Below are positions 6,136 to 61,588 of a DNA stretch of 64,000 nucleotides, piece by piece; position 1 is the first letter of the stretch, and every line of letters starts with the position of its first letter. The position numbers and the translations under genes were made by a program. Location of the stretch: the IMG/VR virus record IMGVR_UViG_3300005337_000441, positions 151,769 to 215,768 of that record. The stretch is one strand, 5' to 3'. The notes beneath the pieces are model-generated. The model was given only the letters and a program-made list of their open reading frames with translations. It was not told the origin of the DNA and did not search any database.

Positions 6136-6174
6136 AGGGACGGGGCCTTCGGGCTCCGTCCCTTTTTGTCCGTC
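6136..6174 (+). terminator. Intrinsic terminator (cUUCGg loop) with TGTCCGTC box
   Basis: agggacggggcc-ttcg-ggctccgtccct then tttt. Confidence 0.8.
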
Positions 6175-6209
6175 TACTGAAGTATCCTATGATGAACTGA
6201 AGGACGGCT

Positions 6210-7850
6210 ATGCCCCACATTTCTGTAACTCTCCCTGAATCGGAGCAGGCGATTGGTCGCCCGGTGATCTTCGGGATCATTGATCAAATTCAGGACGTGT
6301 GCAAGATCGACAAGAGTGCGAAGATCTACTTTCCCGGTCCGACGGGCAAGATGCAGACGTCCGGCAGTGACATTGACGGTCAAGAACAAGACCGCTTTGC
6401 CACATTCGAAAACCAACGCATTGTCTTCATCGACGTGGATGAGGACTTCGACCGCAACACGCTGGGCTCGACGTCCGTGACCCGTGAAGAGTACGCGCCC
6501 GTCTTCGAGGATGCTGCTCTTGGCGTGCAGGTGTGTCCTGTCTACGCCACGAGTCAAGTGAGCATCCAGGTGCGCTACCGCACGCCTTCGGAGACCGAAG
6601 CCCAGCGCTGGCGTGACGACATGCGCATGCGCATCAGTCAGATGCGTGACACCAACCTGCACAAAGTCAAGTACCACTACAGTCTGCCGCAAACGGTCTG
6701 TCAGGTGATCGAGCACGTCTACGACAAGCGTGAAGCCGTGGCCGGTTACGGTGAAGACCTGGGTGTGTACTTCAAGGGACATGCCACCGAGCGGCTCACG
6801 TTGATCACGGACCAGGTTGGCAAGAACGTGCAGTTTGTGGTTGGTGAGAACCAAGGTCGCATCATCGGGCAGTTTGAGCTCGATGCGATTCCCCAGAAAC
6901 CCACGCGGGATGCCACACACGGTGTCTGGGAAGTCTCTTTCACCTACAAGTTCAACTACGAGCGCCCCGTGGGCGTGACCATGCACTACCCCGTGCAGGT
7001 CCACAACCAGCTGTTGGATCCAATGTTCGTGGCCTTCACGGACAAGCCGATCGATCCGTCGAGCTACCCCAAGAGCTTCTCCAAGTCGTTGTCTGCTCTG
7101 AATGCATTCGAGATGGACTCGATGATGAACGCAGCGGGCAATCCCGATCCGTTCATTCGGATGCCGCGCTACGATGACTTCAAGATCCCTCAGGTGCCTC
7201 AGGGCACGGGCACAGCCTGGCTGGCTCTGATCGAAGTGGGTGAGGACAAGAAGGAGCTCTTCAACCTGGCTGAGATGGGTGACATTGTCATGGACGCCGA
7301 CGTGATGAAGTTCATCCGTGAAGTCGAATGGCAGTACATCACCAAGCAGTTCAAGAGCATTCTGCACTTGACGCTGTATCGCAACGGCAACCAGCTCTCC
7401 ACTGGTCATCTGCAATGCGACGCTCAACTCAACGTCACCTCACGTGACGAGTTGGACTTGCGCAATCAGCACCGGGTGCGCATGGGTATCTACGTGGACC
7501 TGACACTTCTGCCCAAGGAAGCGATGGAGCGGCTGTGTCAATACCCCAAGGCCTTTGTGAAAATCATGCGGGCTATGAACTATCTGCTGAGGATCCATCC
7601 GGACTTCGGCAGCCTGGGCGACAAGAACCGCATCACGCCGCTGGAGTTCAGTGACGTCTACGCAGTCCTCACGGGCTACGGTTACAACAACGGTGTGCGG
7701 GGTCGCAATCCCGCCATGTTCAACGGCAGGCCTGATCAGTACCCGCTCTTCAAGAGCATCGATCCCCGGGTGCGGCAGGCTTATCAAGAGACGATGATCC
7801 GTCTGAAGACTTTGATGTCCGGCTACATCGTAGCCTATCAGGGCAATTGA
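6210..7850 (+). CDS. Virion structural protein (gp98-like)
   Basis: 546 aa; YPVQVHNQLL, WEVSFTYKFNYERP; late-type ATCCTATG upstream. Confidence 0.55.
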   Translation: MPHISVTLPESEQAIGRPVIFGIIDQIQDVCKIDKSAKIYFPGPTGKMQTSGSDIDGQEQDRFATFENQRIVFIDVDEDFDRNTLGSTSVTREEYAPVFEDAALGVQVCPVYATSQVSIQVRYRTPSETEAQRWRDDMRMRISQMRDTNLHKVKYHYSLPQTVCQVIEHVYDKREAVAGYGEDLGVYFKGHATERLTLITDQVGKNVQFVVGENQGRIIGQFELDAIPQKPTRDATHGVWEVSFTYKFNYERPVGVTMHYPVQVHNQLLDPMFVAFTDKPIDPSSYPKSFSKSLSALNAFEMDSMMNAAGNPDPFIRMPRYDDFKIPQVPQGTGTAWLALIEVGEDKKELFNLAEMGDIVMDADVMKFIREVEWQYITKQFKSILHLTLYRNGNQLSTGHLQCDAQLNVTSRDELDLRNQHRVRMGIYVDLTLLPKEAMERLCQYPKAFVKIMRAMNYLLRIHPDFGSLGDKNRITPLEFSDVYAVLTGYGYNNGVRGRNPAMFNGRPDQYPLFKSIDPRVRQAYQETMIRLKTLMSGYIVAYQGN

Positions 7851-7890
7851 AACCCGAAGTCGTGAAGAGCCTTTGTAGAAAATTTCCGCG

Positions 7891-7899
7891 ACATATACT
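7891..7899 (+). promoter_or_regulatory. Putative early promoter core ACATATACT
   Basis: Exact 9-mer found six times, always near the start of a non-structural gene. Confidence 0.6.
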
Positions 7900-7957
7900 G
7901 TACTTGGCAGCATTCCCAAGAATGACTGCAAGACCAATACTAGCGAGGAACAAACAC

Positions 7958-8260
7958 ATGGCAATTCACGACGACGGTCAGACTTTCGACAACGCAGCGC
8001 AGTCTCAAATGCGCATCGGTATCGAAAGCATCATGCCTCATCTCAACCAGCACCAGGAGACCCACTTGAGCGACGCCCCGATCTCGACCCCCACCACGGC
8101 CCAGTCCTCGCCTGCGCCGGCCAAGACCTACGCCGATCTCCTGGATCGTCCCGGGGTCCAAGCCAAGCTGTCCGACGACCTGATCGCCGCGCCCGGCCGC
8201 ATCGCACACTGCGCGATCGCCGGCGGCAAGGAACTCTGGAACCGCATCACCGCACGCTAA
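7958..8260 (+). CDS. Small hypothetical protein
   Basis: GAGGA SD, ATG 7958, own promoter motif and terminator. Confidence 0.6.
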   Translation: MAIHDDGQTFDNAAQSQMRIGIESIMPHLNQHQETHLSDAPISTPTTAQSSPAPAKTYADLLDRPGVQAKLSDDLIAAPGRIAHCAIAGGKELWNRITAR

Positions 8261-8273
8261 GCAGCGCACATGA

Positions 8274-8327
8274 CACATCACCTCTGCGGATCTAGACCGC
8301 AGGGGTGATGTGCTCTGTTTCTTTTTT
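8274..8327 (+). terminator. Intrinsic terminator
   Basis: cacatcacctctgcgg / ccgcaggggtgatgtg stem plus U-rich tail. Confidence 0.75.
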
Positions 8328-8365: not shown

Positions 8366-9700
8366 ATGCCTGCAAACATTGCAACAGAAGATGTGACTGC
8401 AGCACCGGCTCTCAACGAAGAACTTGAGACGGTGCGTGCAGACAGCATGACGGTGAAGAAATCGTTGCGCGACATCTCGCTGGATCTGGATTTCATGCTC
8501 GGTGCTCGCTCCCGCATGGGCGAGCTCGTGCGCGTCAACGGCATCCTCACGGACGCCGTGGGTTACGGCATGCCGCTCGATGAGACGGGTGCCCAGATCG
8601 CCCAAGTGGCGGTCGAGAACATCTGTCGACGTCTGGGGCTGAGCACTCAAAAGGCTCAGATCACTCCTGGTCTGGAACACTTCAAGGACAAGGCCACGGC
8701 CATGATGGCCACCAAGATCGCGCTGGAGAGCGTGACCGAGGTGATCAAGACGCTTGCCAAGAAGATCATCGAGTGGCTCCAGGGCATCTGGAACCGCATC
8801 AAGAAGTTCTTCAGTCGCATCGGCGTTCAGCTGCGTCTGACCAAGGAGAATCTTCAGTCCGCCATCGGCCTGGTGAACAAGCTCCCGTCTGACGCCAAGC
8901 CTGTCACCGAGTACATCGAAGACAACAAGGTGGCCAACGAGGATTCGGAATACGCTGACCACGACTACAGCTTCCTTGACAACCACATCCTCTTCGGCAT
9001 CAAGGGCAAGTGCGATTCTTCCACTGCGATGGAGATCGTGAAGAACACCTCCACGTTGATCAACATCAACCGCGAGATCATTCTGCACATCGTCACGTGT
9101 CTGCAAAACCTCATGGATCGTCCTCCGAGCGAGGACAACCTGGAGGCCTACGCCGAGAAGCTCACGGGTGAGATCAAGGAGAAGATGAGTCGCTTCACCT
9201 TGCTCAACAAAAAGAGTGAAGGCAACAAGGTGGTCTACTCGTACGGGCACTTTCACGACAGCGAAGTCTTCCGGCTGCGTGAAGCTGTGGGTATGAGCGA
9301 GGACGACCAGCGGGTGCGCCTCTTCAACATCGATCTGTCCACTGAGAAGATCAAGGACGAACCTTACCGCGTGAAGGTGCTCTCCAAGGGCGAGATGAGC
9401 CATCTGGCCGTGGAGACCATGCGCCTGGTGGATCAGACCGAAGCCTTCAACAAGGTGATCCCGATCGTGGAGAAGGTGCTGCACCACGCTTCCGACACGC
9501 TGCAAGGCTTCTACAACAAGGTCACGACCGACGAAAGCAAGACCACTATCACCCAGGCACTGAACATGATTCACGACATGTTCAACTACGTGGGGCGTCA
9601 CCTGCCAGAGCTCTCAGCTTCTGCGGTGCGGGTGGCTTCGGACTCCTCGGTCTATGTGCGGGCCTCCGTGCAACGACACAAGAAAGCGCAAGCTGCGTGA
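8366..9700 (+). CDS. Internal head protein paralog (phiKZ_IP-like)
   Basis: VAVENICRRLG...PGLEHF...KIALES...IIEWLQGIW aligns with the 4770 protein. Confidence 0.7.
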   Translation: MPANIATEDVTAAPALNEELETVRADSMTVKKSLRDISLDLDFMLGARSRMGELVRVNGILTDAVGYGMPLDETGAQIAQVAVENICRRLGLSTQKAQITPGLEHFKDKATAMMATKIALESVTEVIKTLAKKIIEWLQGIWNRIKKFFSRIGVQLRLTKENLQSAIGLVNKLPSDAKPVTEYIEDNKVANEDSEYADHDYSFLDNHILFGIKGKCDSSTAMEIVKNTSTLININREIILHIVTCLQNLMDRPPSEDNLEAYAEKLTGEIKEKMSRFTLLNKKSEGNKVVYSYGHFHDSEVFRLREAVGMSEDDQRVRLFNIDLSTEKIKDEPYRVKVLSKGEMSHLAVETMRLVDQTEAFNKVIPIVEKVLHHASDTLQGFYNKVTTDESKTTITQALNMIHDMFNYVGRHLPELSASAVRVASDSSVYVRASVQRHKKAQAA

Positions 9701-9705
9701 GAATG

Positions 9706-9752
9706 CCCCGGGAGAGCTTCGGCTTTCCTGGGGTCTTATGCCGTCTTTTTTC
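9706..9752 (+). terminator. Terminator hairpin with TATGCCGTC box
   Basis: ccccgggagagc-ttcg-gctttcctgggg, TATGCCGTC at 9737-9745, then T tract. Confidence 0.75.
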
Positions 9753-13304: not shown

Positions 13305-13620
13305 CAACCTCTACCAAGCTCTTCTGAAGTTCCTGTCACGTTTCACGGATAGGAAGATCCCCGGACCCAAGGGGGTGAGCACGGACGACAACCTCGTCCT
13401 CAGTAGCAACCCTACTGCGGAACAGATCGAAAAAGCTCAACGTCAGACCAAGGCCGTCTACCGTCTGCGAGACCCCGATGAAGTCGGGGGCTTTGAGATG
13501 GACGGCCAGGTCATCCGGGGTGACAAGTCCCTCATCAAGGTTCGCCACACACGCACGCAAGAGATCCTCCTCATGCCCAAGCGTACGTGGGAACTCCTCT
13601 TCGAAAAGGAAAAACCGTGA
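13291..13620 (+). CDS. Hypothetical protein
   Basis: 109-aa ORF overlapping both neighbours. Confidence 0.5.
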   Translation: MQSSSNLYQALLKFLSRFTDRKIPGPKGVSTDDNLVLSSNPTAEQIEKAQRQTKAVYRLRDPDEVGGFEMDGQVIRGDKSLIKVRHTRTQEILLMPKRTWELLFEKEKP

Positions 13621-14930
13621 TCACGATCGACATTGAAGAAGACGCGCTGAAAGTGGTCGGCTCCGACGAGCAAGGCGGCGTCTGGTCTCCGTCGGACACG
13701 TTCGACAAGGAAGACCATTCCATCGTTGGCGAGTACAAGCGCCAGCAATGGGAGATCAGCGACGGCCTCACGCAGATCGAACAGATCACCGCGCTGGAAG
13801 ACATCTTCACCGAAGCCGGTGACGACATCTCCGAGCAAGCCGAGCAGATGCTGCAGGTGACGTTGGAGTCCATCGCCACCCGTCTCGGCCTGGAGCGTCC
13901 TGCCAAGCCGGCGCTGGAGTCTTTCAAGACCAAGCACGTGGCACTGGAAGGTCTGGGTGGCTACCTCAAGCAGATCTGGGAGCGCATCGTCGAGATGTTC
14001 AAGAAGATGTGCAAGGCCGTGCACGACTGGGTCGGCAAGATGGTCGGCAAGGAAAATGCCGCTCACGTCGACAAGGTCAAGCGTGAAGGCAAGGAGATTG
14101 CCAAGAGCGCTCCGGCAGCTCCGAAGCTCACGCAAGTGGGCAATGGCGCGGTCCAACACTTCAAACACCTGGGCAACAACTTCGACATCAAGGCACTCAA
14201 CCGTGACCTCGCCGCACTGCATGCTTCCGTGAAGGCGGCTCACGGTTTTGACAAGGTGATCGGTGAAGTGCTCGGCCTTCTGAACAAGCTGGTCGAAGAA
14301 CGCATCGAAGGGGAAACGGATCTGGACCCCAGCGCCATCGACGCGGTCTTTGCGCCGCTGAACGCCTACACGTCGGCACACTTCCCCACGCTCACCGACC
14401 GTGCCCACTACAGCGTCGGCATCGAGGCAGCCATGCGCAACGCGTTCCCTCACGACTCGGTGCGGGTACAACACTGCCTGGCGCTCCGAGGTCTGGCTTC
14501 GGGCATTGCCTTCTTGGCACTGGAACACAACCATCCGACGGTGCCGGTCAAGTACGTCTACGACCTGCAACATCCCAACTACAGCGACAAGCTCTCCGAC
14601 ACCTTCACCGCCATGGTGCCGGACGTCGGTTCGCTCCAGACCTACGCGGGCATGATCGAGAAGGTCGGCAACGACTTTGACCACGCCGCAGACAACGCGC
14701 AAGACACCATCGGCCAAGACAAGTACGTCAAGAACATGGAGCGCATCCGTGATCTGGTCGGCAAGAAGAAGAGCCCCTGGCTCAGCGCGGCGCCGGCCAT
14801 GTACCGTCAGGTGCATGAACTGCAAAGCGCTGCACTGCGACTCCTTCAAGGACTGAGTTCCTCGATTCACTCCCACTGGGGCATGTACGAGATCTTCATC
14901 AAGCAGTACAGGGTCGAAAAGACCAGCTAA
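13617..14930 (+). CDS. Internal head protein paralog (phiKZ_IP-like)
   Basis: VTLESIATRLG...PALESF...VALEG...QIWERIVEMF; GTG start overlaps upstream stop. Confidence 0.7.
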   Translation: MITIDIEEDALKVVGSDEQGGVWSPSDTFDKEDHSIVGEYKRQQWEISDGLTQIEQITALEDIFTEAGDDISEQAEQMLQVTLESIATRLGLERPAKPALESFKTKHVALEGLGGYLKQIWERIVEMFKKMCKAVHDWVGKMVGKENAAHVDKVKREGKEIAKSAPAAPKLTQVGNGAVQHFKHLGNNFDIKALNRDLAALHASVKAAHGFDKVIGEVLGLLNKLVEERIEGETDLDPSAIDAVFAPLNAYTSAHFPTLTDRAHYSVGIEAAMRNAFPHDSVRVQHCLALRGLASGIAFLALEHNHPTVPVKYVYDLQHPNYSDKLSDTFTAMVPDVGSLQTYAGMIEKVGNDFDHAADNAQDTIGQDKYVKNMERIRDLVGKKKSPWLSAAPAMYRQVHELQSAALRLLQGLSSSIHSHWGMYEIFIKQYRVEKTS

Positions 14931-14936: not shown

Positions 14937-14976
14937 ACAGGAGGGGGCCTTCGGGCTCCCTCCTGTTTATGCCGTC
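14937..14976 (+). terminator. Terminator hairpin with TATGCCGTC box
   Basis: caggagggggcc-ttcg-ggctccctcctg then tttatgccgtc. Confidence 0.75.
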
Positions 14977-18394: not shown

Positions 18395-20320
18395 ATGACC
18401 ACGCTTCAAGTCAAAAGGGTCAACGCCGTACCCAACTCGCCCTACGATCCTTCGACGATCTATATCGTCAAGGCGGCGAACACACAGCTGGTGGAGTTGT
18501 ATTTCACCAACGAAGGCGGCAGCACTCTGCGCCGTGTGTTGACCGAGGGTGATGTTGCTGCGCTCCTGTCGGCCGCCAGTGTGGCGTCTGCAGCCAAGCT
18601 CACCACGGCACGAACCATCAACGGTGTCTCTTTCGACGGCACCGCCAATATCACCATCAACGCGGTGGACTCTACGGCACGCATCGCCGTGAGTGAAAAG
18701 GGAATCCCCAACGGTGTTGCCACGCTTGACGGCAACAGCCAGGTGCCCCTCGCACAGATCAATACCCGTTTCGACAACATCGTCGAGGCGGCCAACCTCG
18801 CTTCTTTCCCGGTGTCGGGTTCGACCCTGAAGGTCTACGTCGCACTCAACACCAACCTGCTGTACCGCTGGGATGCTGGCACGACTGCCTACGTCGCCAT
18901 CGGTGGCGGCACGCTGCCTGACATCATCACGGCTGGTGAATACCCGGTCGCCACGGTCAACTCCAAGGGTCTGGTGACCTCGGGTCGCAACCTGGTGGCG
19001 TCTGACATCCCGAACATCCCGGGCAGCAAGATCAACAGCGCCATCAGCGTGGACACGAGCGGCAATGCTGCAACAGCCACCAATGCGACCAAACTCGCCA
19101 CCGCACGCACCATCAACGGTGTGGCGTTCGATGGCACGGCCAACATCACGATCAACGCCGTCGACTCGACTGCCCGCATCGCTTCGAGCGAGAAGGGTGT
19201 GGCCAACGGCGTCGCGACGCTGGACGCTACCGGCAAGGTCCCTGCAAGCCAACTGCCTTCCTACGTCGATGACGTGAAGGAGTACGCCAACTTCGCTGCA
19301 CTGCCGGGCACGGGTGAGACGGACAAGATCTACGTCACCCTCGACGACAACCGCACCTATCGCTGGGGTGGTTCGGCCTACGTTCGCGTCGGCGCCGATG
19401 CAGCAACTGCTGACACGGCTCTGAAGCTGACCAATGCCCGCACCATTGGTTTGTCGGGTGACGGCACCTGGAGCGTGAGCTTTGACGGCTCCGCCAACGC
19501 GAGTGCTGCTCTGGTCCTGGCCAACGTCAACGCGTCGCCTCAAGCGGACACCTTCCGTCGCTGGACGGTGAACGCCAAGGGTCTGGTCACGGCCAGCTCC
19601 GCAGTGGGTTCGGCTGACATCACCGGCGCACTGGGCTACTCGCCTGTGGATCGCGCTGGCGACACGATGACCGGTGACCTCACGGTCAACAAGGCCAGTG
19701 CCGCTGTCAAGCTCAACACCACGGCAGGCACGTTCGGTGCTGTCTCCTACTCCACCGCAGGCAATCTGCGCTGGGTCGTGGGCAAGGACGCCACAGCCGA
19801 AGGCGGCTCCAACGCTGGTTCGGACTACCGCATCAACCGCTACAACGATGCTGGCGCGCTGCAGGACACTCCGGTGTTCATCAACCGCGCTTCGGGCTTC
19901 GTCGGCATCGGTCTGGGCTCGGCCACGGAACGTCTGACGGTGGGTGACCCCGCCAACGGTGTGGACGTGACGGTCGGCGTTCGTGCCAAGACAGCTGGCG
20001 GTGCCAGCACTCGTGCGCTCATCACGCAGGGTTCGGCCACCGGTTCGTTCAAGATCAAGGTCGACGCAGACGGCAACGGCAGCGAAGGTGCTTTCATCCT
20101 GGAAAACTCCACGGGTGAAATCCTGCGCACGCTGGCCACGCGTCAGGTCGTCATCGGCACCGCCGCTGCAACCGATGGCGCCAAGGTCACGGTCAACGGC
20201 ACGGTCTCGGTCGCTACCGCAACGGCTTCCACTCACGCGCCCAACCTGGCCCAAGTCCGGGCCATGATGGACGAAATCCTTCATCCTTTCCTGTTCATGG
20301 GGGTCACGAATGCCCAATAG
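18395..20320 (+). CDS. Tail fibre protein
   Basis: Duplicated fibre module; ALGYSPVDRAGDTMTGDL and GGSNAGSDYRINRYND fibre motifs. Confidence 0.8.
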   Translation: MTTLQVKRVNAVPNSPYDPSTIYIVKAANTQLVELYFTNEGGSTLRRVLTEGDVAALLSAASVASAAKLTTARTINGVSFDGTANITINAVDSTARIAVSEKGIPNGVATLDGNSQVPLAQINTRFDNIVEAANLASFPVSGSTLKVYVALNTNLLYRWDAGTTAYVAIGGGTLPDIITAGEYPVATVNSKGLVTSGRNLVASDIPNIPGSKINSAISVDTSGNAATATNATKLATARTINGVAFDGTANITINAVDSTARIASSEKGVANGVATLDATGKVPASQLPSYVDDVKEYANFAALPGTGETDKIYVTLDDNRTYRWGGSAYVRVGADAATADTALKLTNARTIGLSGDGTWSVSFDGSANASAALVLANVNASPQADTFRRWTVNAKGLVTASSAVGSADITGALGYSPVDRAGDTMTGDLTVNKASAAVKLNTTAGTFGAVSYSTAGNLRWVVGKDATAEGGSNAGSDYRINRYNDAGALQDTPVFINRASGFVGIGLGSATERLTVGDPANGVDVTVGVRAKTAGGASTRALITQGSATGSFKIKVDADGNGSEGAFILENSTGEILRTLATRQVVIGTAAATDGAKVTVNGTVSVATATASTHAPNLAQVRAMMDEILHPFLFMGVTNAQ

Positions 20321-28506: not shown

Positions 28507-28512
28507 GCAACG

Positions 28513-28551
28513 GCGGGAGCAGGGGAAACCCTAGCTCCCGCTTTTGCCGTC
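28513..28551 (+). terminator. Terminator hairpin with TTTGCCGTC box
   Basis: gcgggagc...gctcccgc then ttttgccgtc. Confidence 0.7.
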
Positions 28552-32806: not shown

Positions 32807-32847
32807 GGACCTGGAGCTGTCAAGGCTCTGGGTCCTTTTGGTCCGTC
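32807..32847 (+). terminator. Terminator hairpin with GTCCGTC variant box
   Basis: ggacctggagc / gctctgggtcc then ttttggtccgtc. Confidence 0.7.
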
Positions 32848-36244: not shown

Positions 36245-36301
36245 ACCAGGGGACGGGGGTAACCTCGTCCTCTTGTACCGTCAACTATTTGGGAGATCGA
36301 A

Positions 36302-36913: not shown

Positions 36914-36970
36914 GACGGCATAGACCCCCTAGGAGCTTCGCGGCTCCTAGGGGGCATGTCGTTCTTTTTT
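36914..36970. terminator. Bidirectional terminator between convergent genes
   Basis: ccccctaggagc / gctcctaggggg stem; GACGGCATA (reverse complement of the box) on the left, T tract on the right. Confidence 0.8.
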
Positions 36971-36972
36971 GG

Positions 36973-41478: not shown

Positions 41479-41518
41479 GGAGACGGGGCCTTCGGGCTCC
41501 GTCTCTTTTTATGCCGTC
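41479..41518 (+). terminator. MCP terminator with TATGCCGTC box
   Basis: gagacggggcc-ttcg-ggctccgtctc then tttttatgccgtc; near copy of the 6136 hairpin. Confidence 0.85.
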
Positions 41519-41544: not shown

Positions 41545-41571
41545 TTATTTGAGATACAACAAGGAACAACC

Positions 41572-42000: not shown

Positions 42001-42010
42001 AAGAACAACC

Positions 42011-42421: not shown

Positions 42422-42430
42422 GGGAACAAC

Positions 42431-44064: not shown

Positions 44065-44069
44065 TTGCC

Positions 44070-44546: not shown

Positions 44547-44552
44547 ATCAAC

Positions 44553-45592: not shown

Positions 45593-45623
45593 AGAGAGGA
45601 CCTTCGGGTCCTCTTTTTTTTTT
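45592..45623 (+). terminator. Intrinsic terminator
   Basis: agaggacc-ttcg-ggtcctct then a long T tract. Confidence 0.85.
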
Positions 45624-45647
45624 GTCTCCTTAGAAGGAATTTGGGTC

Positions 45648-45656
45648 ACATATACT
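45648..45656 (+). promoter_or_regulatory. Putative early promoter core ACATATACT
   Basis: Exact motif directly after a terminator. Confidence 0.65.
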
Positions 45657-45698
45657 GTTCTTGACATTGATCCCCTTTTCAATACTAGGAATACCAAC

Positions 45699-46283: not shown

Positions 46284-46291
46284 ACCTCAAC

Positions 46292-46327
46292 GAGCCCCCG
46301 CTATGCCAGGCGGGGGCTTATGCCGTC
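46292..46327 (+). terminator. Hairpin with TATGCCGTC box and no U tract
   Basis: gagcccccgcc-type stem, then TATGCCGTC. Confidence 0.6.
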
Positions 46328-46351
46328 AACACTACCAATAGGAGTACCACC

Positions 46352-47495: not shown

Positions 47496-47560
47496 AAATA
47501 ACGGTAGGTGGGATTATCTATTGAGATCCCATCTATCCGTTCAACCCTGGAGAGTCAGAA

Positions 47561-48617: not shown

Positions 48618-48676
48618 CATAGACCTCCAGGTGCCCTTGCAGGCCCTGGAGGTCTATGCTGTCTGCTTTCTTTTTC
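48618..48676 (+). terminator. Terminator hairpin with TATGCTGTC box
   Basis: catagacctccagg / cctggaggtctatg. Confidence 0.7.
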
Positions 48677-48691
48677 TGAAAAATTACAGTC

Positions 48692-51065: not shown

Positions 51066-53714
51066 ATGTTGCGCACCATCATCAAGCGAAGCGGGGAACG
51101 TGAGCCGTATGACCCCGTCAAGCTCCAGAAGTGGGTGATCTGGGCGGCGGACCACATCCGTGCCCGTGTGGACTGGTCCAAGATCATCACCAAAACGGTG
51201 AAAGCGGTCAAGGGCGAAGAGATCAAATCGCAAGATCTGCAAAAAGAGCTGATCAAACAACTGGTGCGGGCCAAGCGCTGGCCTGAAGCCCTGATGGCTG
51301 GCCGCCTGTACTCGGCGCTCACCCACAAAGAAATCTTCGACGACAAGCTTCCCACGGTGCGCAAGCTCCAGTCGAAGCTGGAAAAGCTCGGCCTGATGAC
51401 CAAGCTGCCGTACACCGACGAGGAGTACGCAGCCATCGAGCGCATGGTCGAGCATGACCGGGACATGCACATGTCCTATGCGCAGGTGCGTCAGGTCCGC
51501 AAGAAGTACGCCATCCAGAACATGGTCAAGGGCATCGAGTACGAGACGCCCCAGTACGTCTTCATGCGCATGGCCATGAAGCTGGCGCAGAAGATCGACG
51601 TCGACAAGCGCCTGGCGCAGGTCAAGAGCTTCTACGACGACCTGTCGTTCAGCCGCATGAACGCGCCGTCGCCCAACTACCTGAACCTGGGCACGCCCCT
51701 GAACGGCCTGGCTTCGTGCTGCCTGATCGCCTCGGGTGACGACGCCATGAGCCTCACGATCGGTGACCACATCGCCAACGTGATGACGTTCAAGTCCGCC
51801 GGCATCGGCAACACGCTCATCACCCGCTCCGTGGGTGACCCGGTGCGAGGTGGTCGCATCCGCCATCTGGGCAAGATGGGTTACTACGCTGCCAACTCCA
51901 AGGCGGTGAAGGCCAACATCCAAGCCGGTCGTGGCGGAGCGCTCACCAGTTACTTCTCGATCTTCGACCCGGAGAACGAGACCATCATCAATGCGCAGAA
52001 CCCGCGCACGGTGGAAGACAAGTCCAACCGCGACATGCATTTCGCGGCACAAGACAACCGTCTCTTTGCCCTGAAGGTGATGAACAACGAAGACATCTTC
52101 CTGTTCAACGTCTTCACGGCTCCGGATCTGTTCTGGGCCATGTTCTCGGGTGACCAGGACAAGTTCGACGAGCTGTACGCCAAGTACGAAGCCGACACGT
52201 CCTTCAAGAAGACGTACGTCAGCGCTCGTGAGCTGCTGGTGAAGTTCTACGGCCAGCGCAACGAAGTCGGTACGCTGTACCGCATGCAGGTCGACGAGGT
52301 CAATCGTCACACGGGTTACCAGGAGCGTGTCCTGAGCTCCAATCTGTGCGCGGAGATCACGCAAGTGACCTACCCGTACTACGACATGCGTCACCTGTAC
52401 TCCAAGGAAGCGCACGGGTTCGTGAAGTTCACGGACACCGAAGGCGTCGAGCACAACCTCGACTACTCGCGCAAGGTGCAGATCGCACGGGCTGACAAGG
52501 CGTTCGTCTCCTTCATGGGCAACGTCCTGGCCGGTGACATCATCAACGGCTCCACCACGGTGGCTTCCGTCGAAGAAGTGCGTCAGGAGTCGGAAATCTC
52601 GACCTGCTCGCTCGGTGGCATCGTCATCACGAACATCGAGAACGACGAGCAGTACGAGCAGGCTGCGTACAACAACCTCCTGATGATCGACGAATGTATC
52701 GATCTGACGGAATACGCGTTCCCGCATCTGGAGTTCACCGCCAAGTCACGCCGCAACGCGGGCGTCGGCATCCTGGGTCTGGCCTACCACATGGCCCGCA
52801 AGGGTCTGAAGTACGACACCCCGGAAGGTCTGAAGGAAATCCACCGTGTGGCCGAACGCCACATGTACTTCCTGATCAAGGCGGCGATTCGCATCACCGA
52901 AGAGCGTGGCGTCTGCGACTGGGCTCACAAGACCAAGTGGGCCAACGGCTGGCTGCCGATCGACACGTACAAGCGCTCGGTCGATGAACTGGTTCCTCAC
53001 GAGCTGGTCTACGACTGGGAGTGGTTGCGTGCTCGCATCATCGAGCTCGGTGGTCTGCACTTCAGTTCGCTGTGCGCACACATGCCGACCGAGTCCTCCT
53101 CCAAGGCTTCGGGTGCTCCGAACAGCGTCTACCCGGTGCGTGACCTGGATCTGAAGAAGACCGACGTCGCCAACGCCCTGGACTGGGTCGCTCCGGACAA
53201 CGACATCCTGGCCGATGCTTACCAGCTCGCCTGGGAGATCTCGCCGGTGGATCAGGCCAAGTTCTACGCCGTGATCCAGAAGTTCACCGACCAAGCCATC
53301 AGCGCTGACTTCTACCGTGACCGCACGAAGAAGATCATCGTCGAAGGCAAGGAAGTGACCGCTCCTCTGACCGACGACGAGCTGATCGAAGAGTACCGTG
53401 CTTGCGTCAAGTACGGCGTGAAGACTCAGTACTACAACAACAGCTTCACCGGCGGCAAGAAGATCGACAAGATCGTGCTGAAGGACCAGCCGCAACCGGT
53501 GGCCGTGGAAGAAACGGCAGCTCCGCAGATCATCATCACTCCGAGCAAGGACAACTCGCCTGCTCACATTGTCCTCGAAGACGGCAAGATGCCGATGATC
53601 GCTGAGCAAGTCCGTACTGAAGCTGCGCACGCGGTGAGCACTGATGCCCTGGATGACCTCCATGGCGTCGAAGATGCAACGGCCGGTTGCGCGGGTGGTT
53701 TCTGTACCCTCTAA
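51066..53714 (+). CDS. nrdA: Ribonucleoside-diphosphate reductase alpha subunit, class Ia
   Basis: ATP-cone start IIKRSGEREPYD, YETPQ, SCC, SNLCAEI, TCSLG, MPTESSS, DQAISAD, KTQYY, terminal CAGGFC. Confidence 0.95.
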   Translation: MLRTIIKRSGEREPYDPVKLQKWVIWAADHIRARVDWSKIITKTVKAVKGEEIKSQDLQKELIKQLVRAKRWPEALMAGRLYSALTHKEIFDDKLPTVRKLQSKLEKLGLMTKLPYTDEEYAAIERMVEHDRDMHMSYAQVRQVRKKYAIQNMVKGIEYETPQYVFMRMAMKLAQKIDVDKRLAQVKSFYDDLSFSRMNAPSPNYLNLGTPLNGLASCCLIASGDDAMSLTIGDHIANVMTFKSAGIGNTLITRSVGDPVRGGRIRHLGKMGYYAANSKAVKANIQAGRGGALTSYFSIFDPENETIINAQNPRTVEDKSNRDMHFAAQDNRLFALKVMNNEDIFLFNVFTAPDLFWAMFSGDQDKFDELYAKYEADTSFKKTYVSARELLVKFYGQRNEVGTLYRMQVDEVNRHTGYQERVLSSNLCAEITQVTYPYYDMRHLYSKEAHGFVKFTDTEGVEHNLDYSRKVQIARADKAFVSFMGNVLAGDIINGSTTVASVEEVRQESEISTCSLGGIVITNIENDEQYEQAAYNNLLMIDECIDLTEYAFPHLEFTAKSRRNAGVGILGLAYHMARKGLKYDTPEGLKEIHRVAERHMYFLIKAAIRITEERGVCDWAHKTKWANGWLPIDTYKRSVDELVPHELVYDWEWLRARIIELGGLHFSSLCAHMPTESSSKASGAPNSVYPVRDLDLKKTDVANALDWVAPDNDILADAYQLAWEISPVDQAKFYAVIQKFTDQAISADFYRDRTKKIIVEGKEVTAPLTDDELIEEYRACVKYGVKTQYYNNSFTGGKKIDKIVLKDQPQPVAVEETAAPQIIITPSKDNSPAHIVLEDGKMPMIAEQVRTEAAHAVSTDALDDLHGVEDATAGCAGGFCTL

Positions 53715-53725
53715 CAACAAGCATC

Positions 53726-54844
53726 ATGGACAAGACCAACAACATTTTCGACTCCGACAAGGACTACAAGTCCAAGACCGGTTCGATCTTCCTGGAACGC
53801 CGCAAGGGTCTCCTGGACAGCATCAACAAGCGCCTGCCTCTGATCTGGGCGCTGTACAAACAGCTCAAGACGATGGACTGGGACGAAAACGAGTTCCCGT
53901 ACGGCGACTGCAAAGCCGAGTTCATCCTGGGCAACAAAGACGCCTCCGAGGCGATGATCGAAACGCTGGGCTGGCAGTGGGAGACGGACTCCGTCGCCGC
54001 GCACCACCTCGTGCCGTTGATGGCACCGTTTGTCTCGTCCTCGGAGTACTGGGTTGCGCTGTGTCGCATCCAGGACAACGAAAACGTCCACGCGCTGACC
54101 TACTCGGAAATTGTACGTGGCAGCTTTGACGACCCGGACGTGGTCATGAACAGCGTGCTCGAATCTCAGGAACCGCTCAAGCGGCTGGGAGGCGTCACCA
54201 AGATCATGGCCGAAGCCCTGGAAGTCGGTGCTCGCATCACCCTCGGCGAGATCGACCGTGAGTCCGATCAAGCACGCGACGTGGCCATGAAGCTGCTCGT
54301 GGCCATCTTCTGCATGGAGCGTGTGCAGTTCATGCCCAGTTTCGCTGTGACCTTCGGCGTCACCGAGACCTACGGCGCGTACATGCCCATCGCCAAAGCC
54401 GTGCAGAAAATCTGCAACGACGAGTACAACATCCACGTCGAAGTGCAACGCGAAGCGCTGCGCAACGAGCTCTCGATCGACATCGGTCGTGCGAGCTTCG
54501 AGCGCATCCGCCCTGAAATCGAAGCGATCGTCCGAGAAGTCGGCGAATGCGAACTGAACTGGACTCGGACCTACCTCTTCCGCAACGGTCGAGAGATTCC
54601 GAACTGCACGGCGGACAGCCTGTGCGACTTCGTGCGCTTTGCGCTCACGGACGTCTACAACGAACTGCCTGGCATCGAGAACCCCTTCGGTAACGTGACG
54701 GAAAATCCGCTCCCGTACATGGAAGACTGGGTCGAGATGGACAAGAACCAGGCCGCACCCCAAGAAGAGAAGACCGGCAACTACTTGCTCGGTGGTCTCG
54801 TTCGCGTGGCGGGCGAAAAGATCTACGATACCGCTGGTATCTGA
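53726..54844 (+). CDS. nrdB: Ribonucleoside-diphosphate reductase beta subunit, class Ia
   Basis: W.ENE, ETDS, ENVHALTY (radical Tyr present), ERVQF..SF, DE...H, QAAPQE...NY. Confidence 0.92.
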   Translation: MDKTNNIFDSDKDYKSKTGSIFLERRKGLLDSINKRLPLIWALYKQLKTMDWDENEFPYGDCKAEFILGNKDASEAMIETLGWQWETDSVAAHHLVPLMAPFVSSSEYWVALCRIQDNENVHALTYSEIVRGSFDDPDVVMNSVLESQEPLKRLGGVTKIMAEALEVGARITLGEIDRESDQARDVAMKLLVAIFCMERVQFMPSFAVTFGVTETYGAYMPIAKAVQKICNDEYNIHVEVQREALRNELSIDIGRASFERIRPEIEAIVREVGECELNWTRTYLFRNGREIPNCTADSLCDFVRFALTDVYNELPGIENPFGNVTENPLPYMEDWVEMDKNQAAPQEEKTGNYLLGGLVRVAGEKIYDTAGI

Positions 54845-54857: not shown

Positions 54858-54895
54858 GTACGAGGAGGGCCAAGTGCCCTCCTCGTACTGCCGTC
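54858..54895 (+). terminator. Hairpin with TGCCGTC box and no U tract
   Basis: gtacgaggagggc / gccctcctcgtac then tgccgtc. Confidence 0.65.
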
Positions 54896-56090: not shown

Positions 56091-57716
56091 ATGAACGCAC
56101 TCATGAGTGAACTCATGGCTCGCCATACGCCGCAGATGAACGCCGCCGTCATGAACGGCCTGGCCTGCCTGCACATGCGCGGCGCCCAGGAGTACATCCA
56201 TCGCGTCTTTCTCGGTGTGAACAAAAGCCTGGAAAGTCATGGGCTCAAGTACATCGGCTACGAACCCTGCACGCCCGAGGAGGCGTATGGGGAAGCCACG
56301 AAGGTGCGCAACAACAAGCGCGTCTTCGACATCGCTCAGACCAGCATCTACATGGTGCGCTACAAGTTTGAGTTCAACGGGAAACCCATTCCCGACCGCT
56401 ACATCTATCTGCCCTACGTCGAGGACGGCGGCCTGATGCACATCAGCGGCTCCTTGTATCACCTCTCGCCGGTGCTCTCCGACAAGGTGATCTCGCCCGA
56501 TACGCACAGCATCTTCGTGCGACTGCTGCGTGACAAGGTGACGTTCCGTCGCTGCTACCATTCGTTGGTGATCAACGGGGTGCGTGAGACGGTGCAAGTG
56601 GTCTGGTCGCAGATCTACCGCAAGCAAACCGACAAGCGTCGCATCCAGGCCACTACCAAGGCCGAGACGACGGCAGCTCACTACCTGTTCGCGAAGCACG
56701 GCTTCAAGGACACGTTCCTGCGCTACACCGGGATGGTGCCGCAGGTGAGCGAAGGCGGCTTCAGCGCTCAGACGCATCCGCCCGAGCAGTGGATCCTCTG
56801 TGAGTCCTCGGCCACGTCCACCCACGTCAAGCCGCGCACCTACATCGGGGAGTACTACAACCCCACGCGGATCCAGCTCGCGATTCCTCGTGAATCGTGG
56901 ACTCCGATGGCGCAGTCGCTGGTCGAAGGTTTCTTCTACGTCGTGGATCACTTCCCCGACCGCTTGAAGGCCGAACACCTGGAGAGCACCGCGCTGTGGA
57001 TGATCCTGCTCGGACACATCATCTTCAGCGGCCAGTTCGGCGAGAACAAGCTGTACCAAGACATCCAAGAACACTTCAAGTCGCTGGACGAGTGCGTGGA
57101 CCAGATCATCGCTGAGAAGTTGGCGGAGATCGGGTACAACATCAACAACTTCTACGACCTGATGGCCATGGTCATGGGCACCTGGAACGATCTGGTCTCC
57201 ACAACCGAGCGTTCCAACTTGTCCATGTACGGCAAGAACCTGGAGATCTTGTACTACGCGTTGTATCCGATCACCTCGGATATCTTCCTGGTGAACTTCA
57301 AGCTCAACAAGCTGGCGAGCAAGAAGAAGTTGACGGACAACGACGTCATCGAGACGTTCAACCGCAATTTGAAGGTGCGTGCTATCTTCGAGCTCAGCTC
57401 CAACTCGCTCGTCGCCGAGCCCGTGTCGTACTCCGGGGACCACAAGTACCCGAAGATCACGTCGCGACTGGCCAGTCAGGAAAGCTGGCAGGGTCAGGGT
57501 GGACGCCGCAAGCGTCTGGTCATTGGTCCTGACCAGTACCTGGACACGAGTCAGATCGAAGTCGGCAGCGTGTTGTTCCTCTCCAAGAGCAACCCGTCGC
57601 CGGCCACCAAGATCAACCCGTACGTGCACATCGACCTTGGCACCAGCACGGTGGTTCGCAATCCCGAACTCATCGAGACGCTGGAGAAAACGCAACGACT
57701 TCTGGACAAGAGATGA
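56091..57716 (+). CDS. Non-virion RNA polymerase subunit, N-terminal beta part (phiKZ gp123-like)
   Basis: 541 aa; YEPCTPEE, RYIYLPYV, SPVLSDKVIS, IFVRLLRDK, EVGS, INPY; position after MCP. Confidence 0.8.
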   Translation: MNALMSELMARHTPQMNAAVMNGLACLHMRGAQEYIHRVFLGVNKSLESHGLKYIGYEPCTPEEAYGEATKVRNNKRVFDIAQTSIYMVRYKFEFNGKPIPDRYIYLPYVEDGGLMHISGSLYHLSPVLSDKVISPDTHSIFVRLLRDKVTFRRCYHSLVINGVRETVQVVWSQIYRKQTDKRRIQATTKAETTAAHYLFAKHGFKDTFLRYTGMVPQVSEGGFSAQTHPPEQWILCESSATSTHVKPRTYIGEYYNPTRIQLAIPRESWTPMAQSLVEGFFYVVDHFPDRLKAEHLESTALWMILLGHIIFSGQFGENKLYQDIQEHFKSLDECVDQIIAEKLAEIGYNINNFYDLMAMVMGTWNDLVSTTERSNLSMYGKNLEILYYALYPITSDIFLVNFKLNKLASKKKLTDNDVIETFNRNLKVRAIFELSSNSLVAEPVSYSGDHKYPKITSRLASQESWQGQGGRRKRLVIGPDQYLDTSQIEVGSVLFLSKSNPSPATKINPYVHIDLGTSTVVRNPELIETLEKTQRLLDKR

Positions 57717-60022: not shown

Positions 60023-60040
60023 GGTCACAAGCCTCACCAG

Positions 60041-60088
60041 CACATCCGCAGGCCGGTCAAGCCTGCGGATGTGTGTCATTTTCTTTTT
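60041..60088 (+). terminator. Intrinsic terminator
   Basis: cacatccgcaggc / gcctgcggatgtg then T-rich tail. Confidence 0.75.
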
Positions 60089-60100
60089 CAAGGATACACA

Positions 60101-60511
60101 GTGGCTACACAGGCCGAACTCTTAGAGCAGATGCGACCACTGTTGGTCGAGCTCGCTGCCATCGCTGACGGTGACTACAACGTCAATGAACGCAACCTCT
60201 GGAAACGTTGGTTCGGCAAAGAGCGCGGCGGTTGGCTGTACGTGGAGTCCAATGAAGATCGCGGCAAGATCGATATTGCGTCCGCATCCGATCGCACGAC
60301 GCACAATCCTCACGCCGGCAAGTACTACTCGGTCTCGTTCACCAAACACGGATCACTGGAGTACTTCATGGAGGCCATCCTGACCCTGCGGATCAAGTGG
60401 GATCACCACGGCAGGAGCTCCGTCGAAGATCTCCAACAGGCTTTCACGTTCGTGACTTGGTTGCACAAGAAACTCGTGATCGAGAAATACCCTCGCGCCA
60501 ACGATCAATAA
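60101..60511 (+). CDS. Hypothetical protein
   Basis: AAGGA SD, GTG 60101. Confidence 0.55.
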   Translation: MATQAELLEQMRPLLVELAAIADGDYNVNERNLWKRWFGKERGGWLYVESNEDRGKIDIASASDRTTHNPHAGKYYSVSFTKHGSLEYFMEAILTLRIKWDHHGRSSVEDLQQAFTFVTWLHKKLVIEKYPRANDQ

Positions 60512-60536
60512 ACCCACCTCTCTATTCGGAACCATC

Positions 60537-61544
60537 ATGACTCAAGAAAACAGCATCTCCGGTGAAGACCTGGAGCAAATGCGGCGTGATTCGACCGACC
60601 GGGCTGCACAAGAGATGAACTCTCTGCACGGTCGCGATCCCAACGCTCAGATGAACATCCAGATGGATGAGATCCTGGGTCACGCCAGCCAACAGGCCAA
60701 GAGCTACGACTCGTTGTTCGTCGAAGCCATCGGTCCGATGTTCTTGCTGCCTGAAGGCGAATCCTCGGTGAAGATCCGCTTCAACACCACGACGGCTGTG
60801 CGTCAGGTGCGCGAACTGCCCTGGGACAAGCTGCCACTCAAGGAAGATCGCACGGAAGAGCAGATCAAAAAGGAAGTCGCCTATCTGACCTTCAAGCGCC
60901 AGTGGACGCTTGTGGCCGAAGCGTTCCAACAGATGCTCTCGACCAAGGCATCGCTCGTGGACATCGACTGCGTGTTGCCCGAGGACATCGACTACAGGCC
61001 GTACTTCCACAGTGACGAAGTCAAGGTGGCCGACGTCAACGGCAGCAAGAACAAGGCCGAAGTCATCCGTGCTTGGCTGGAAGTGGCCATCGGCAAGATG
61101 GTGCACAAGTCCGGCTACCTTCAAGCGCACAAGAAGGCTTTCGACAAGGGTCTGACCGACGAGGACGGCAAGTCGCTGTACGTCAAACCCACCGTCTCGA
61201 TCCTCACGCCTTACAACAGCGTGATCGGTCCCTACCTCTTCGAGAGCAGCTCGATCGAGGTGGAGTACGAGTCGGCACCGACGGATAGCGACGAAAAGCT
61301 CACGGTGAACTTCATCCCTGTGCTGATGATGGGCGACCACGACTACTTCGCCATCTTCCATGCCGGCGAGCAAGAAGACGTGAACCTGCAAGCCGTGTAC
61401 TCCATGGGTGTGCTCGCACGCCGCCCCTCGCTGGCCATCGTCCACGGTCAAGGTGGTGATCGTCACGCACTGTGCGGCCTGAGCGCTGCCTTCTTCCCCA
61501 TCAACCCCGTCGTGCATCATTTCTCGATCGACGAACGTCTGTAA
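60537..61544 (+). CDS. Hypothetical protein
   Basis: 335 aa with phage codon bias. Confidence 0.6.
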   Translation: MTQENSISGEDLEQMRRDSTDRAAQEMNSLHGRDPNAQMNIQMDEILGHASQQAKSYDSLFVEAIGPMFLLPEGESSVKIRFNTTTAVRQVRELPWDKLPLKEDRTEEQIKKEVAYLTFKRQWTLVAEAFQQMLSTKASLVDIDCVLPEDIDYRPYFHSDEVKVADVNGSKNKAEVIRAWLEVAIGKMVHKSGYLQAHKKAFDKGLTDEDGKSLYVKPTVSILTPYNSVIGPYLFESSSIEVEYESAPTDSDEKLTVNFIPVLMMGDHDYFAIFHAGEQEDVNLQAVYSMGVLARRPSLAIVHGQGGDRHALCGLSAAFFPINPVVHHFSIDERL

Positions 61545-61555
61545 ACCAGGCCAAG

Positions 61556-61588
61556 AGCAGGTGGGGAAACCCCCTGCTTTATGCCGTC
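61556..61588 (+). terminator. Hairpin with TATGCCGTC box
   Basis: agcagg...cctgct then ttatgccgtc. Confidence 0.65.

What the first reader, a model, noticed from the sequence alone, without database searches (positions are those of the whole stretch)
6136..61588. Orientation-specific (T)ATGCCGTC box directly 3' of about 12 terminator hairpins
Seen: TATGCCGTC at 9737, 14968, 41510, 46319 and 61580; variants TTGTCCGTC 6166, TTTGCCGTC 28543, TGGTCCGTC 32839, TGTACCGTC 36274, TATGCTGTC 48655 and ACTGCCGTC 54887. At the convergent junction the reverse complement GACGGCATA (36914-36922) lies on the side downstream of the minus-strand helicase gene, so the box follows transcription direction. Several hairpins (36247, 46292, 54858) have no real U tract. 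Inference: a sequence-specific termination, pausing or RNA 3'-end processing signal for the phage RNAPs, or a binding site for a phage RNA-binding or export protein. I recall similar boxes beside stem-loops in other phiKZ-like genomes but no established function.
Basis: partly seen in the sequence, partly recalled or inferred. Interest (0 to 1): 0.68.

Follow-up and report, generated by a model that had tools for sequence, protein, structure and literature searches.

The report
phiKZ-type terminator box after hairpins
The (T)ATGCCGTC box is real: it is the conserved sequence that follows the transcription-terminator hairpins of phiKZ-like jumbo phages, already described in phiKZ itself, and here it takes the place of the usual run of U's in a distant, GC-rich relative from soil.

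Summary
TATGCCGTC occurs 6 times in the window against 0.26 expected. In the whole 215.8-kb genome it occurs 18 times, and 17 copies sit directly 3' of a GC-rich hairpin.

The box follows the direction of the upstream gene. It flanks both sides of hairpins between convergent genes, and most box sites have no T-run.

The genome is a phiKZ-like (chimallivirus) phage from a rhizosphere metagenome. It encodes homologues of both phage multisubunit RNA polymerases.

The box is not new as a kind. Putzeys et al. 2024 mapped 61 phiKZ terminators that share hairpin + TTATKYYGT, which TATGCCGT fits exactly, and 201phi2-1 has a similar motif. I found hairpin-TATGYYG enriched in six further Gram-negative relatives (38-57% GC), weakly in a seventh, and not in a Bacillus relative.

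Mapping a sample of the published phiKZ 3' ends puts them inside the box, mostly at positions 5-6 just before the conserved G. That favours a signal read by the polymerase over an RNA tail that a protein binds.

Best reading: this is the phage-polymerase-specific release or pause element of a factor-independent terminator. Its first four bases equal the late-promoter start motif TATG, which a core subunit of the phiKZ non-virion polymerase binds; that link is untested. Verdict: a new member of a known kind, of moderate interest.

The parts
6134..6174 (+). Terminator: hairpin 6134-6165 and box variant TTGTCCGTC 6166-6174. No T-run follows. It lies downstream of ORF 4770-6110.
   Evidence: dG -28.5, gap 0
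9705..9751 (+). Terminator: hairpin 9705-9734, box TATGCCGTC 9737-9745, then TTTTTT. It lies downstream of ORF 8366-9700.
   Evidence: dG -24.4, gap 2
14937..14976 (+). Terminator: hairpin 14937-14966 and box TATGCCGTC 14968-14976. A T-rich stretch starts 3 nt later. It lies downstream of ORF 13587-14930.
   Evidence: dG -27.2
28512..28551 (+). Terminator: hairpin 28512-28542 and box variant TTTGCCGTC 28543-28551. No T-run follows. It lies downstream of ORF 27727-28506.
   Evidence: dG -26.1
32807..32847 (+). Terminator: hairpin 32807-32835, TTT, then box variant TGGTCCGTC 32839-32847. It lies downstream of ORF 31925-32797.
   Evidence: dG -23.5
36248..36282 (+). Terminator: hairpin 36248-36273 and box variant TGTACCGTC 36274-36282. 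No T-run follows. It lies downstream of ORF 35699-36244.
   Evidence: dG -19.6
36914..36955 (-). Minus-strand terminator of the DnaB-like helicase gene (36973-38508, - strand): hairpin 36924-36955 and box TATGCCGTC, read on the - strand at 36922-36914.
   Evidence: dG -28.0
36925..36970 (+). Plus-strand side of the same convergent hairpin: degenerate box CATGTCGTT 36955-36963, then CTTTTTT. Together with the previous part this forms a bidirectional terminator.
41479..41518 (+). Terminator of the major head protein gene (39276-41441): hairpin 41479-41506, TTT, then box TATGCCGTC 41510-41518. No T-run follows.
   Evidence: dG -26.2
46293..46327 (+). Terminator: hairpin 46293-46318 and box TATGCCGTC 46319-46327. 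No T-run follows. It lies downstream of ORF 45447-46283.
   Evidence: dG -21.6
48622..48680 (+). Terminator: hairpin 48622-48654, box TATGCTGTC 48655-48663, then a T-rich stretch. It lies downstream of ORF 47561-48613.
   Evidence: dG -25.2
54860..54895 (+). Terminator: hairpin 54860-54886 and box variant ACTGCCGTC 54887-54895. No T-run follows. It lies downstream of ORF 53687-54844.
   Evidence: dG -21.7
61555..61588 (+). Terminator: hairpin 61555-61579 and box TATGCCGTC 61580-61588. No T-run follows. It lies downstream of ORF 60537-61544.
   Evidence: dG -21.7

Best explanation
Each site is a factor-independent transcription terminator of the type used by phiKZ-like (chimallivirus) phages. 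It has a GC-rich RNA hairpin whose sequence varies from site to site. A sequence-conserved box, U-A-U-G-C-C-G-U-C, follows at once and occupies the place of the U-tract in a bacterial intrinsic terminator.

Inferred mechanism: the phage's own multisubunit RNA polymerases transcribe the hairpin and then the first 5-7 nt of the box. The weak U-A-U pairs next to the stem, together with a sequence-specific pause at the Y|G step (box positions 6/7), hold the enzyme there. The hairpin then forms and releases the RNA, so the transcript ends inside the box. The last bases, G-T-C, act as DNA at or just ahead of the active site.

Shown here: the anatomy, the statistics, the strand logic, the presence of both polymerases, and conservation of the box across the family.

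Taken from published phiKZ data: RNA 3' ends map inside the box.

Inferred only: the pausing step, and which polymerase or polymerases respond.
For: (1) The box sits at a fixed 0-3 nt from the stem base at all 13 window sites and at 0-2 nt in 32 of 37 genome-wide sites. All 37 stems differ in sequence, and every stem position takes at least four pair types.

(2) It follows the direction of the upstream gene (27 of 29). Its sense flank is favoured over the antisense flank at co-directional junctions (18 against 6 of 43, p = 0.007). It is present on 14 of 18 sides of convergent-junction hairpins, where a promoter would make no sense.

(3) It replaces the U-tract: 20 of 32 box sites have no T-run, and only 8 of 62 terminator hairpins have a T-run at 0-3 nt. 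A canonical terminator scan is not enriched and misses five of six box sites.

(4) TATGCCGT fits TATKYYGT, the phiKZ terminator motif from ONT-cappable-seq (61 terminators; PMC10914365). The largest 201phi2-1 motif (n = 59) is reported to resemble it (PMC11512511).

(5) I mapped the published phiKZ termination sites T034-T076 onto the phiKZ sequence. In 22 hairpin+TATK terminators the 3' end lies inside the box: position 1 in 3, position 3 in 4, position 4 in 2, position 5 in 5, position 6 in 7 and position 7 in 1. For terminator T057 the most distant read ends are at positions 7-8.

(6) TATG at the stem end is enriched in phiKZ (24 against 3.1 expected), FLC9 (13 against 1.8), RP12 (24 against 3.8), LucasX (23 against 4.1), Eowyn (17 against 3.6) and RSL2 (9 against 3.1), with consensus TATG-Y-Y-G-Y across 38-57% GC.

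(7) The genome encodes homologues of the phiKZ non-virion polymerase subunits gp68, gp71, gp73, gp74 and gp123, and of the virion polymerase subunits gp80, gp149, gp178 and gp180. Sigma-70-like promoters are not enriched (3 against 6 expected).
Against: There are no RNA data for this genome, which comes from a rhizosphere metagenome; no listed run that holds the sequence is on record as RNA. Termination here is therefore inferred by homology.

The phiKZ 3' ends could have been trimmed back by exonucleases from a more distal stop. ONT-cappable-seq has an error of a few nt and cannot call ends at A.

About a third of box sites are followed by a T-run 9-12 nt after the stem, which could be the true stop point at those sites.

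Units that start at the candidate early promoter end at both box-type and T-run-type terminators, so it is not clear which polymerase reads the box.

A C-C-G-rich hybrid is not obviously unstable.
Confidence: 0.7

Rival explanations
1. The TATG of the box is a late-promoter start element for the non-virion polymerase, so the hairpin+box is a stop-and-restart junction. Transcription of the next gene would begin at the G of TATG, right after the upstream transcript is released.
For: The phiKZ late promoter consensus is 5'-TATG-3' with the G as +1 (PMC4666361). The core beta-like subunit GP123 binds exactly these four bases of the non-template strand (PMC12809450). Most boxes lie upstream of a co-oriented gene. 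The window's GP123 homologue keeps S144, F151, K158, H331, S334 and Q466.
Against: The box occurs on both sides of hairpins between convergent genes (window 36914-36963; genome 11773, 25305, 62578 and 148305), where a start would only give antisense RNA. Exact boxes do not occur without a hairpin in divergent promoter regions. A separate TATG motif, aTCC-TATG-a, lies 15-40 nt upstream of start codons and often downstream of the box. In phiKZ no start site was called at the box of T046, T057 or T065. Position 2 of the box is loose (A, T or G), whereas every TATG position matters in the promoter.
Confidence: 0.1
2. The box acts in the RNA. It would be a single-stranded 3' tail that a phage RNA-binding protein recognises for stability, for export from the phage nucleus or for translation, or it would be an endonuclease processing site.
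For: The box is strand-specific and next to a stable hairpin, which is a common protein-binding architecture. Chimalliviruses must move mRNA out of the phage nucleus (established knowledge). Some sites have T-runs further downstream where transcription might really end.
Against: In phiKZ the mapped 3' ends lie at box positions 1-7 and the most distant ends of T057 at positions 7-8. The conserved G7-T8(-C9) is therefore mostly not in the RNA, yet in this genome CCGTC is the best-kept part of the box. No known RNA family matches.
Confidence: 0.1
3. The sites are ordinary host-type intrinsic terminators with a degenerate U-tract, or copies of a repeated palindromic (REP or MITE-like) element, and the box has no meaning of its own.
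For: Hairpins with UUCG or GNRA loops are generic terminator features. Some sites do carry T-runs.
Against: A nine-base word at 16-23 times the chance expectation, with fixed spacing and strand, cannot be a degenerate U-tract. All 37 stems differ in sequence while the box is constant, the opposite of a copied element. The same box is kept in phages of 38-57% GC. phiKZ-type phages transcribe independently of the host polymerase (PMC4666361).
Confidence: 0.04

Closest known systems
phiKZ conserved intrinsic-terminator motif, 5'-BCCYCCCCHWWDGGGRRGGBYTTATKYYGT-3' (Putzeys et al. 2024, Microlife, PMC10914365); motif A of 201phi2-1 (PMC11512511)
   Same: Both have a GC-rich stem-loop followed at once by (T)TAT-K-YY-GT. 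Both sit downstream of genes and are co-oriented with them. Both include bidirectional versions between convergent genes. Both belong to a phage with virion and non-virion multisubunit RNA polymerases.
   Different: Here the box is more rigid and GC-rich: TATGCCGTC, with the CCGTC half best kept, against TATG-T/C-T/C-G-T-T/A in phiKZ. The genome is 57% GC against 37-38%. The major head protein is at most 44% identical to any phage in the collection searched. No 3'-end mapping exists for this phage.
Bacterial intrinsic (Rho-independent) terminator
   Same: A stable GC-rich hairpin sits just after the stop codon, and the RNA probably ends a few nt past the stem with no factor needed.
   Different: The U-tract is absent at most sites and is replaced by a specific word that holds G and C. 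Standard terminator scans miss these sites.
phiKZ late promoter start motif TATG, read by GP123 of the non-virion polymerase (PMC4666361; PMC12809450)
   Same: The tetranucleotide is identical and lies on the non-template (sense) strand.
   Different: The flanks differ: a hairpin upstream and CCGTC downstream. The box also occurs at convergent gene ends. No start sites were called at three phiKZ box terminators.
T7 RNA polymerase class II (sequence-specific) termination or pause signal, ATCTGTT plus a U-run (from my own knowledge, not checked here)
   Same: A phage polymerase stops at a specific DNA word rather than at a plain U-tract.
   Different: T7 class II needs no hairpin, belongs to a single-subunit polymerase, and has an unrelated sequence.

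Membership tests
phiKZ-type (chimallivirus) hairpin + TTATKYYGT terminator | A GC-rich stem-loop directly upstream of the box | tested here: met
   All 13 window sites have hairpins of -19.6 to -28.5 kcal/mol that end 0-3 nt before the box. 29 of 33 genome-wide TATGYYGT sites follow a hairpin.
phiKZ-type (chimallivirus) hairpin + TTATKYYGT terminator | A 3' flank that matches (T)TAT-K-Y-Y-G-T | tested here: met
   TATGCCGT and TATGCTGT fit exactly. The weaker variants (TTTG, TGTG, TTGTCCGTC) fit in part.
phiKZ-type (chimallivirus) hairpin + TTATKYYGT terminator | Downstream of genes and co-oriented with them, with bidirectional forms at convergent junctions | tested here: met
   27 of 29 are co-oriented. 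Sense flank 18 against antisense flank 6 of 43. Convergent sides 14 of 18.
phiKZ-type (chimallivirus) hairpin + TTATKYYGT terminator | The host genome is a phiKZ-like phage that encodes virion and non-virion multisubunit RNA polymerases | tested here: met
   tblastn finds homologues of phiKZ gp68, gp71, gp73, gp74, gp123, gp80, gp149, gp178 and gp180. The major head protein is of phiKZ type, and the order helicase(-), gp119-like gene, head protein is the same as in phiKZ.
phiKZ-type (chimallivirus) hairpin + TTATKYYGT terminator | RNA 3' ends map at the motif | not testable with these tools
   No listed run that holds this genome is on record as RNA. This is shown only for phiKZ, from published sites remapped.
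Canonical bacterial intrinsic terminator | A U-tract (at least 5 T in 8) starting 0-2 nt after the stem | tested here: not met
   Only 8 of 62 terminator hairpins have a T-run at 0-3 nt, and 20 of 32 box sites have none within 30 nt. The tool scan finds 19 sites against 18 expected and picks up one of six box sites.
phiKZ late promoter (TATG, +1 = G) | A TATG placed so as to drive a downstream gene | tested here: not met
   The box occurs on both sides of convergent-junction hairpins, where it faces the 3' end of the opposing gene.
phiKZ late promoter (TATG, +1 = G) | A transcription start at the G | not testable with these tools
   No RNA data exist for this genome. In phiKZ no start site was listed at the boxes of T046, T057 and T065 (three sites only).
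Repeated palindromic element (REP or MITE-like) | Copies share the palindrome sequence | tested here: not met
   37 of 37 hairpins are distinct, and each stem position takes 4-6 pair types.

The most novel reading that the evidence does not exclude
The terminator box may be a promoter look-alike. As the elongating non-virion polymerase passes, the pocket under the beta-lobe of its core subunit (the GP123 homologue, window 56091-57716) would capture the single-stranded non-template TATG. That is the same pocket that reads the late-promoter start motif. The active site would move on 2-3 nt by scrunching and stall at the conserved Y|G step, and the hairpin would then release the RNA. One DNA-reading site in the core enzyme would thus mark both where transcripts start and where they end, which would explain how a polymerase without exchangeable sigma or known termination factors ends RNAs without a U-tract.
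Probability: 0.2. Interest if true: 0.75.

Novelty: new member of a known kind. Interest (0 to 1): 0.38.

Why it matters
It shows that the hairpin + TATGYYGT terminator is not peculiar to AT-rich Pseudomonas phages. It is a family-wide signal kept from 38% to 57% GC, so it must be read by conserved phage machinery rather than reflect base composition.

In this GC-rich genome the box stands alone, without a U-tract, at most sites. That separates it cleanly from ordinary intrinsic termination and gives natural test templates.

For annotation, standard terminator finders miss these sites, whereas the box plus a hairpin marks the ends of transcription units in uncultured chimalliviruses.

The identity of its first four bases with the late-promoter motif bound by a core polymerase subunit gives a concrete, testable idea for how these unusual polymerases terminate.

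Tried and rejected
- **Megablast against phages.** An 8-kb piece of the window found nothing, so close relatives could not be used for site-by-site comparison.
- **RNA evidence.** The one search for sequencing runs found a rhizosphere metagenome as the probable source and no listed holder on record as RNA. Read laying was therefore not used, because contigs cannot show RNA ends.
- **Motif refinement.** An EM-style refinement of the box matrix drifted into plain T-rich tails. I replaced it with a fixed degenerate pattern.
- **GP123 pocket conservation.** This test of the promoter-pocket idea was not discriminating. F151, H331 and S144 are invariant even in the Bacillus phage AgentSmith, which lacks the box, while Y399 and N398 are not kept in the window's protein.
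- **IMG/VR relatives.** Three contigs with a 57-59% identical head protein (43-45% GC) show only degenerate T(A/T)TGTY flanks. They are too distant for tests of compensatory change.
- **Promoter class against terminator type.** Units that start at the candidate early promoter end at both box-type and T-run terminators, so there was no clean split.
- **Literature.** Supplements of the 201phi2-1 paper and of the journal version of Putzeys et al. are not held. The preprint supplement was used instead. Ceyssens et al. 2014 is not held.
- **Rfam and tRNA scans.** Both found nothing in the window.


Full report
**Observation.** TATGCCGTC is at 9737, 14968, 41510, 46319 and 61580 on the + strand and at 36914-36922 on the - strand. 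That is 6 copies against 0.26 expected, and none of 100 shuffles reached 6. The listed variants are at 6166, 28543, 32839, 36274, 48655 and 54887. Each box is preceded by a hairpin of -19.6 to -28.5 kcal/mol that ends 0-3 nt before it. I add one site: the + side of the convergent hairpin at 36925-36954 carries CATGTCGTT followed by a T-run.

**Whole genome.** The window is the last 64 kb of a single 215,768-bp contig of 57% GC.
- The exact box occurs 18 times against about 1.1 expected. All copies lie in the 13.6% of the genome that my simple gene calls leave intergenic.
- 17 of the 18 directly follow a hairpin, and one hairpin carries two boxes in tandem.
- The looser word TATGYYGT occurs 33 times against about 10 expected. 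29 of these have a hairpin of at most -19.9 kcal/mol ending 0-2 nt before them, and 27 of those 29 are co-oriented with the gene upstream.
- Of 62 strong co-oriented intergenic hairpins, 32 carry at least 8 of 9 matches to T-W-T-G-Y-Y-G-T-Y at the stem end. The rate is 1.4% at random positions and 2-3% for hairpins inside genes.
- At co-directional junctions the sense flank carries the box in 18 of 43 hairpins and the antisense flank in 6 of 43 (p = 0.007). At convergent junctions 14 of 18 hairpin sides carry it, giving the arrangement GACGGCATA-hairpin-TATGCYGTC.

**Anatomy.**
- The 37 hairpins that precede TWTGYYGT all differ in sequence, and each stem position takes four to six pair types. 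Loops are often UUCG or GNRA. The spacer to the box is 0-2 nt in 32 of 37. So structure is selected in the stem and sequence in the box, which excludes a copied repeat element.
- The box stands where a U-tract would be. 20 of 32 box sites have no T-run within 30 nt, and 10 have one only after the box. Only 8 of all 62 terminator hairpins have a T-run at 0-3 nt.
- The tool's canonical terminator scan of window 28001-48000 found 19 sites against 18 expected and recovered one of the six box sites. Sigma-70-like promoters are not enriched, at 3 against 6 expected.

**What the genome is.**
- The window encodes a phiKZ-type major head protein, a DnaB-like helicase on the opposite strand just upstream of a gp119-like gene and the head gene (as in phiKZ), ribonucleotide reductase, and a homologue of phiKZ gp123.
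- The nearest phage by head protein is Burkholderia phage FLC9, at 44% identity. Megablast found nothing.
- tblastn with phiKZ proteins finds homologues of the non-virion polymerase subunits gp68, gp71, gp73, gp74 and gp123, and of the virion polymerase subunits gp80, gp149, gp178 and gp180.
- The DNA is held by a rhizosphere metagenome run, and no listed holder is on record as RNA.

**What is known.**
- Putzeys et al. 2024 (PMC10914365) mapped phiKZ RNA 3' ends by ONT-cappable-seq. They report that 61 intrinsic terminators share a stem-loop followed by TTATKYYGT. TATGCCGT fits this exactly.
- The 201phi2-1 study (PMC11512511) found a main terminator motif (n = 59) that it says strongly resembles the phiKZ one.
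- The box is therefore a published terminator motif. [quoted passage not shown]

**Comparative evidence gathered here.**
- I took 32-50 kb around the head gene from each of eight phages.
- TATG at the 3' end of hairpins is enriched in phiKZ (24 against 3.1 expected), FLC9 (13 against 1.8), RP12 (24 against 3.8), LucasX (23 against 4.1), Eowyn (17 against 3.6) and RSL2 (9 against 3.1).
- It is weak in Vibrio phage pVa-21 (4 against 1.9) and absent in Bacillus phage AgentSmith (2 against 1.8).
- The aligned flanks give TATG-Y-Y-G-Y in all the Gram-negative phages from 38 to 57% GC.
- Three IMG/VR contigs with a head protein 57-59% identical to the window's show a degenerate T(A/T)TGTY.

**Where the RNA ends.**
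- I took the published termination sites T034-T076 from Table S4 of the preprint supplement and placed them on the phiKZ sequence (loci L009, L001 and L010).
- In the 22 terminators with hairpin + TATK, the 3'-terminal base is box position 1 (3 sites), 3 (4), 4 (2), 5 (5), 6 (7) or 7 (1). Most transcripts therefore end as hairpin-UAUGY(Y), just before the conserved G.
- For T057 the most distant read ends are at positions 7-8.
- The conserved G-T(-C) is thus mostly not in the RNA. This argues for a signal read by the polymerase on DNA or in the hybrid, not for a tail bound by a protein.
- Caveats: exonuclease trimming is possible, and this method has an error of a few nt and cannot call ends at A.

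**The TATG link.**
- The phiKZ late promoter consensus is TATG with the G as +1, and every one of the four positions matters (PMC4666361).
- A 2026 structure shows that the beta-like core subunit GP123 binds these four non-template bases in a pocket under the beta-lobe (PMC12809450).
- The terminator box starts with the same four bases on the same strand. The window's GP123 homologue (56091-57716) keeps S144, F151, K158, H331, S334 and Q466, has H185Y and Y406F, and differs at N398 and Y399.
- Because the Bacillus phage without the box also keeps F151 and H331, this check does not discriminate.
- The idea that the elongating enzyme is caught by a promoter look-alike remains a hypothesis, which I put at about 0.2.

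**Against the box being a working promoter.**
- It occurs on both sides of convergent junctions.
- Exact boxes do not occur without a hairpin in divergent promoter regions.
- A distinct aTCC-TATG-a motif lies closer to start codons.
- No start site was called at three phiKZ box terminators.
- Position 2 of the box is loose.

**Verdict.** As a kind the element is already known, so this is a new, GC-rich and unusually rigid member. It shows that the signal is family-wide and can fully replace the U-tract.

Noticed in passing
window 7892, 28627, 41537, 45649, 48693, 54929 (genome-wide 19 copies): The motif (gT)CA-CATATACT-yy-n-yTG occurs 19 times, all on the + strand and none on the - strand. It usually lies 20-40 nt after a terminator. 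Copies precede the gene clusters for the non-virion polymerase homologues (genome 119959 before the gp68 homologue, 124914 before gp71-74, and 206697 before the unit that holds the gp123 homologue). It is therefore a likely early promoter for the virion polymerase.
   Followed up: partly
window 6188, 8340, 9771, 38659 (genome-wide about 10 copies): A second TATG motif, (g)aTyC-TATG-a/t, lies 15-40 nt upstream of the start codons of structural-region genes, including the gp119-like gene just before the head gene. It is a candidate late promoter of the phiKZ TATG type and is distinct from the terminator box.
   Followed up: partly
outside the window: genome 124493-124510, - strand: One terminator carries the box twice in tandem (TATGCCGTCTATGCCGTC) after a single hairpin.
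   Followed up: no
outside the window: genome 78820-78871 and 113861-113900: Two hairpins that my gene calls place at co-directional (+ +) junctions carry a box on the antisense side as well. Either a small minus-strand gene was missed or these act as bidirectional insulators.
   Followed up: no
window 36973-41441: The gene order is the same as in phiKZ, RP12, RSL2, pVa-21 and Eowyn: DnaB-like helicase on the - strand, a short gp119-like gene, then the major head protein. The divergent 165-nt region 38509-38673 corresponds in position to the well-studied phiKZ late promoter P119L.
   Followed up: partly
window 18395-20320: A 641-aa ORF matches many tail-fibre and head-decoration PHROG families through short repeated stretches, which suggests a repeat-rich fibre-like protein.
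   Followed up: no
window 28001-48000: Sigma-70-like promoter matches are fewer than in shuffles (3 against 6.0). No tRNA gene or Rfam family was found anywhere in the window.
   Followed up: yes
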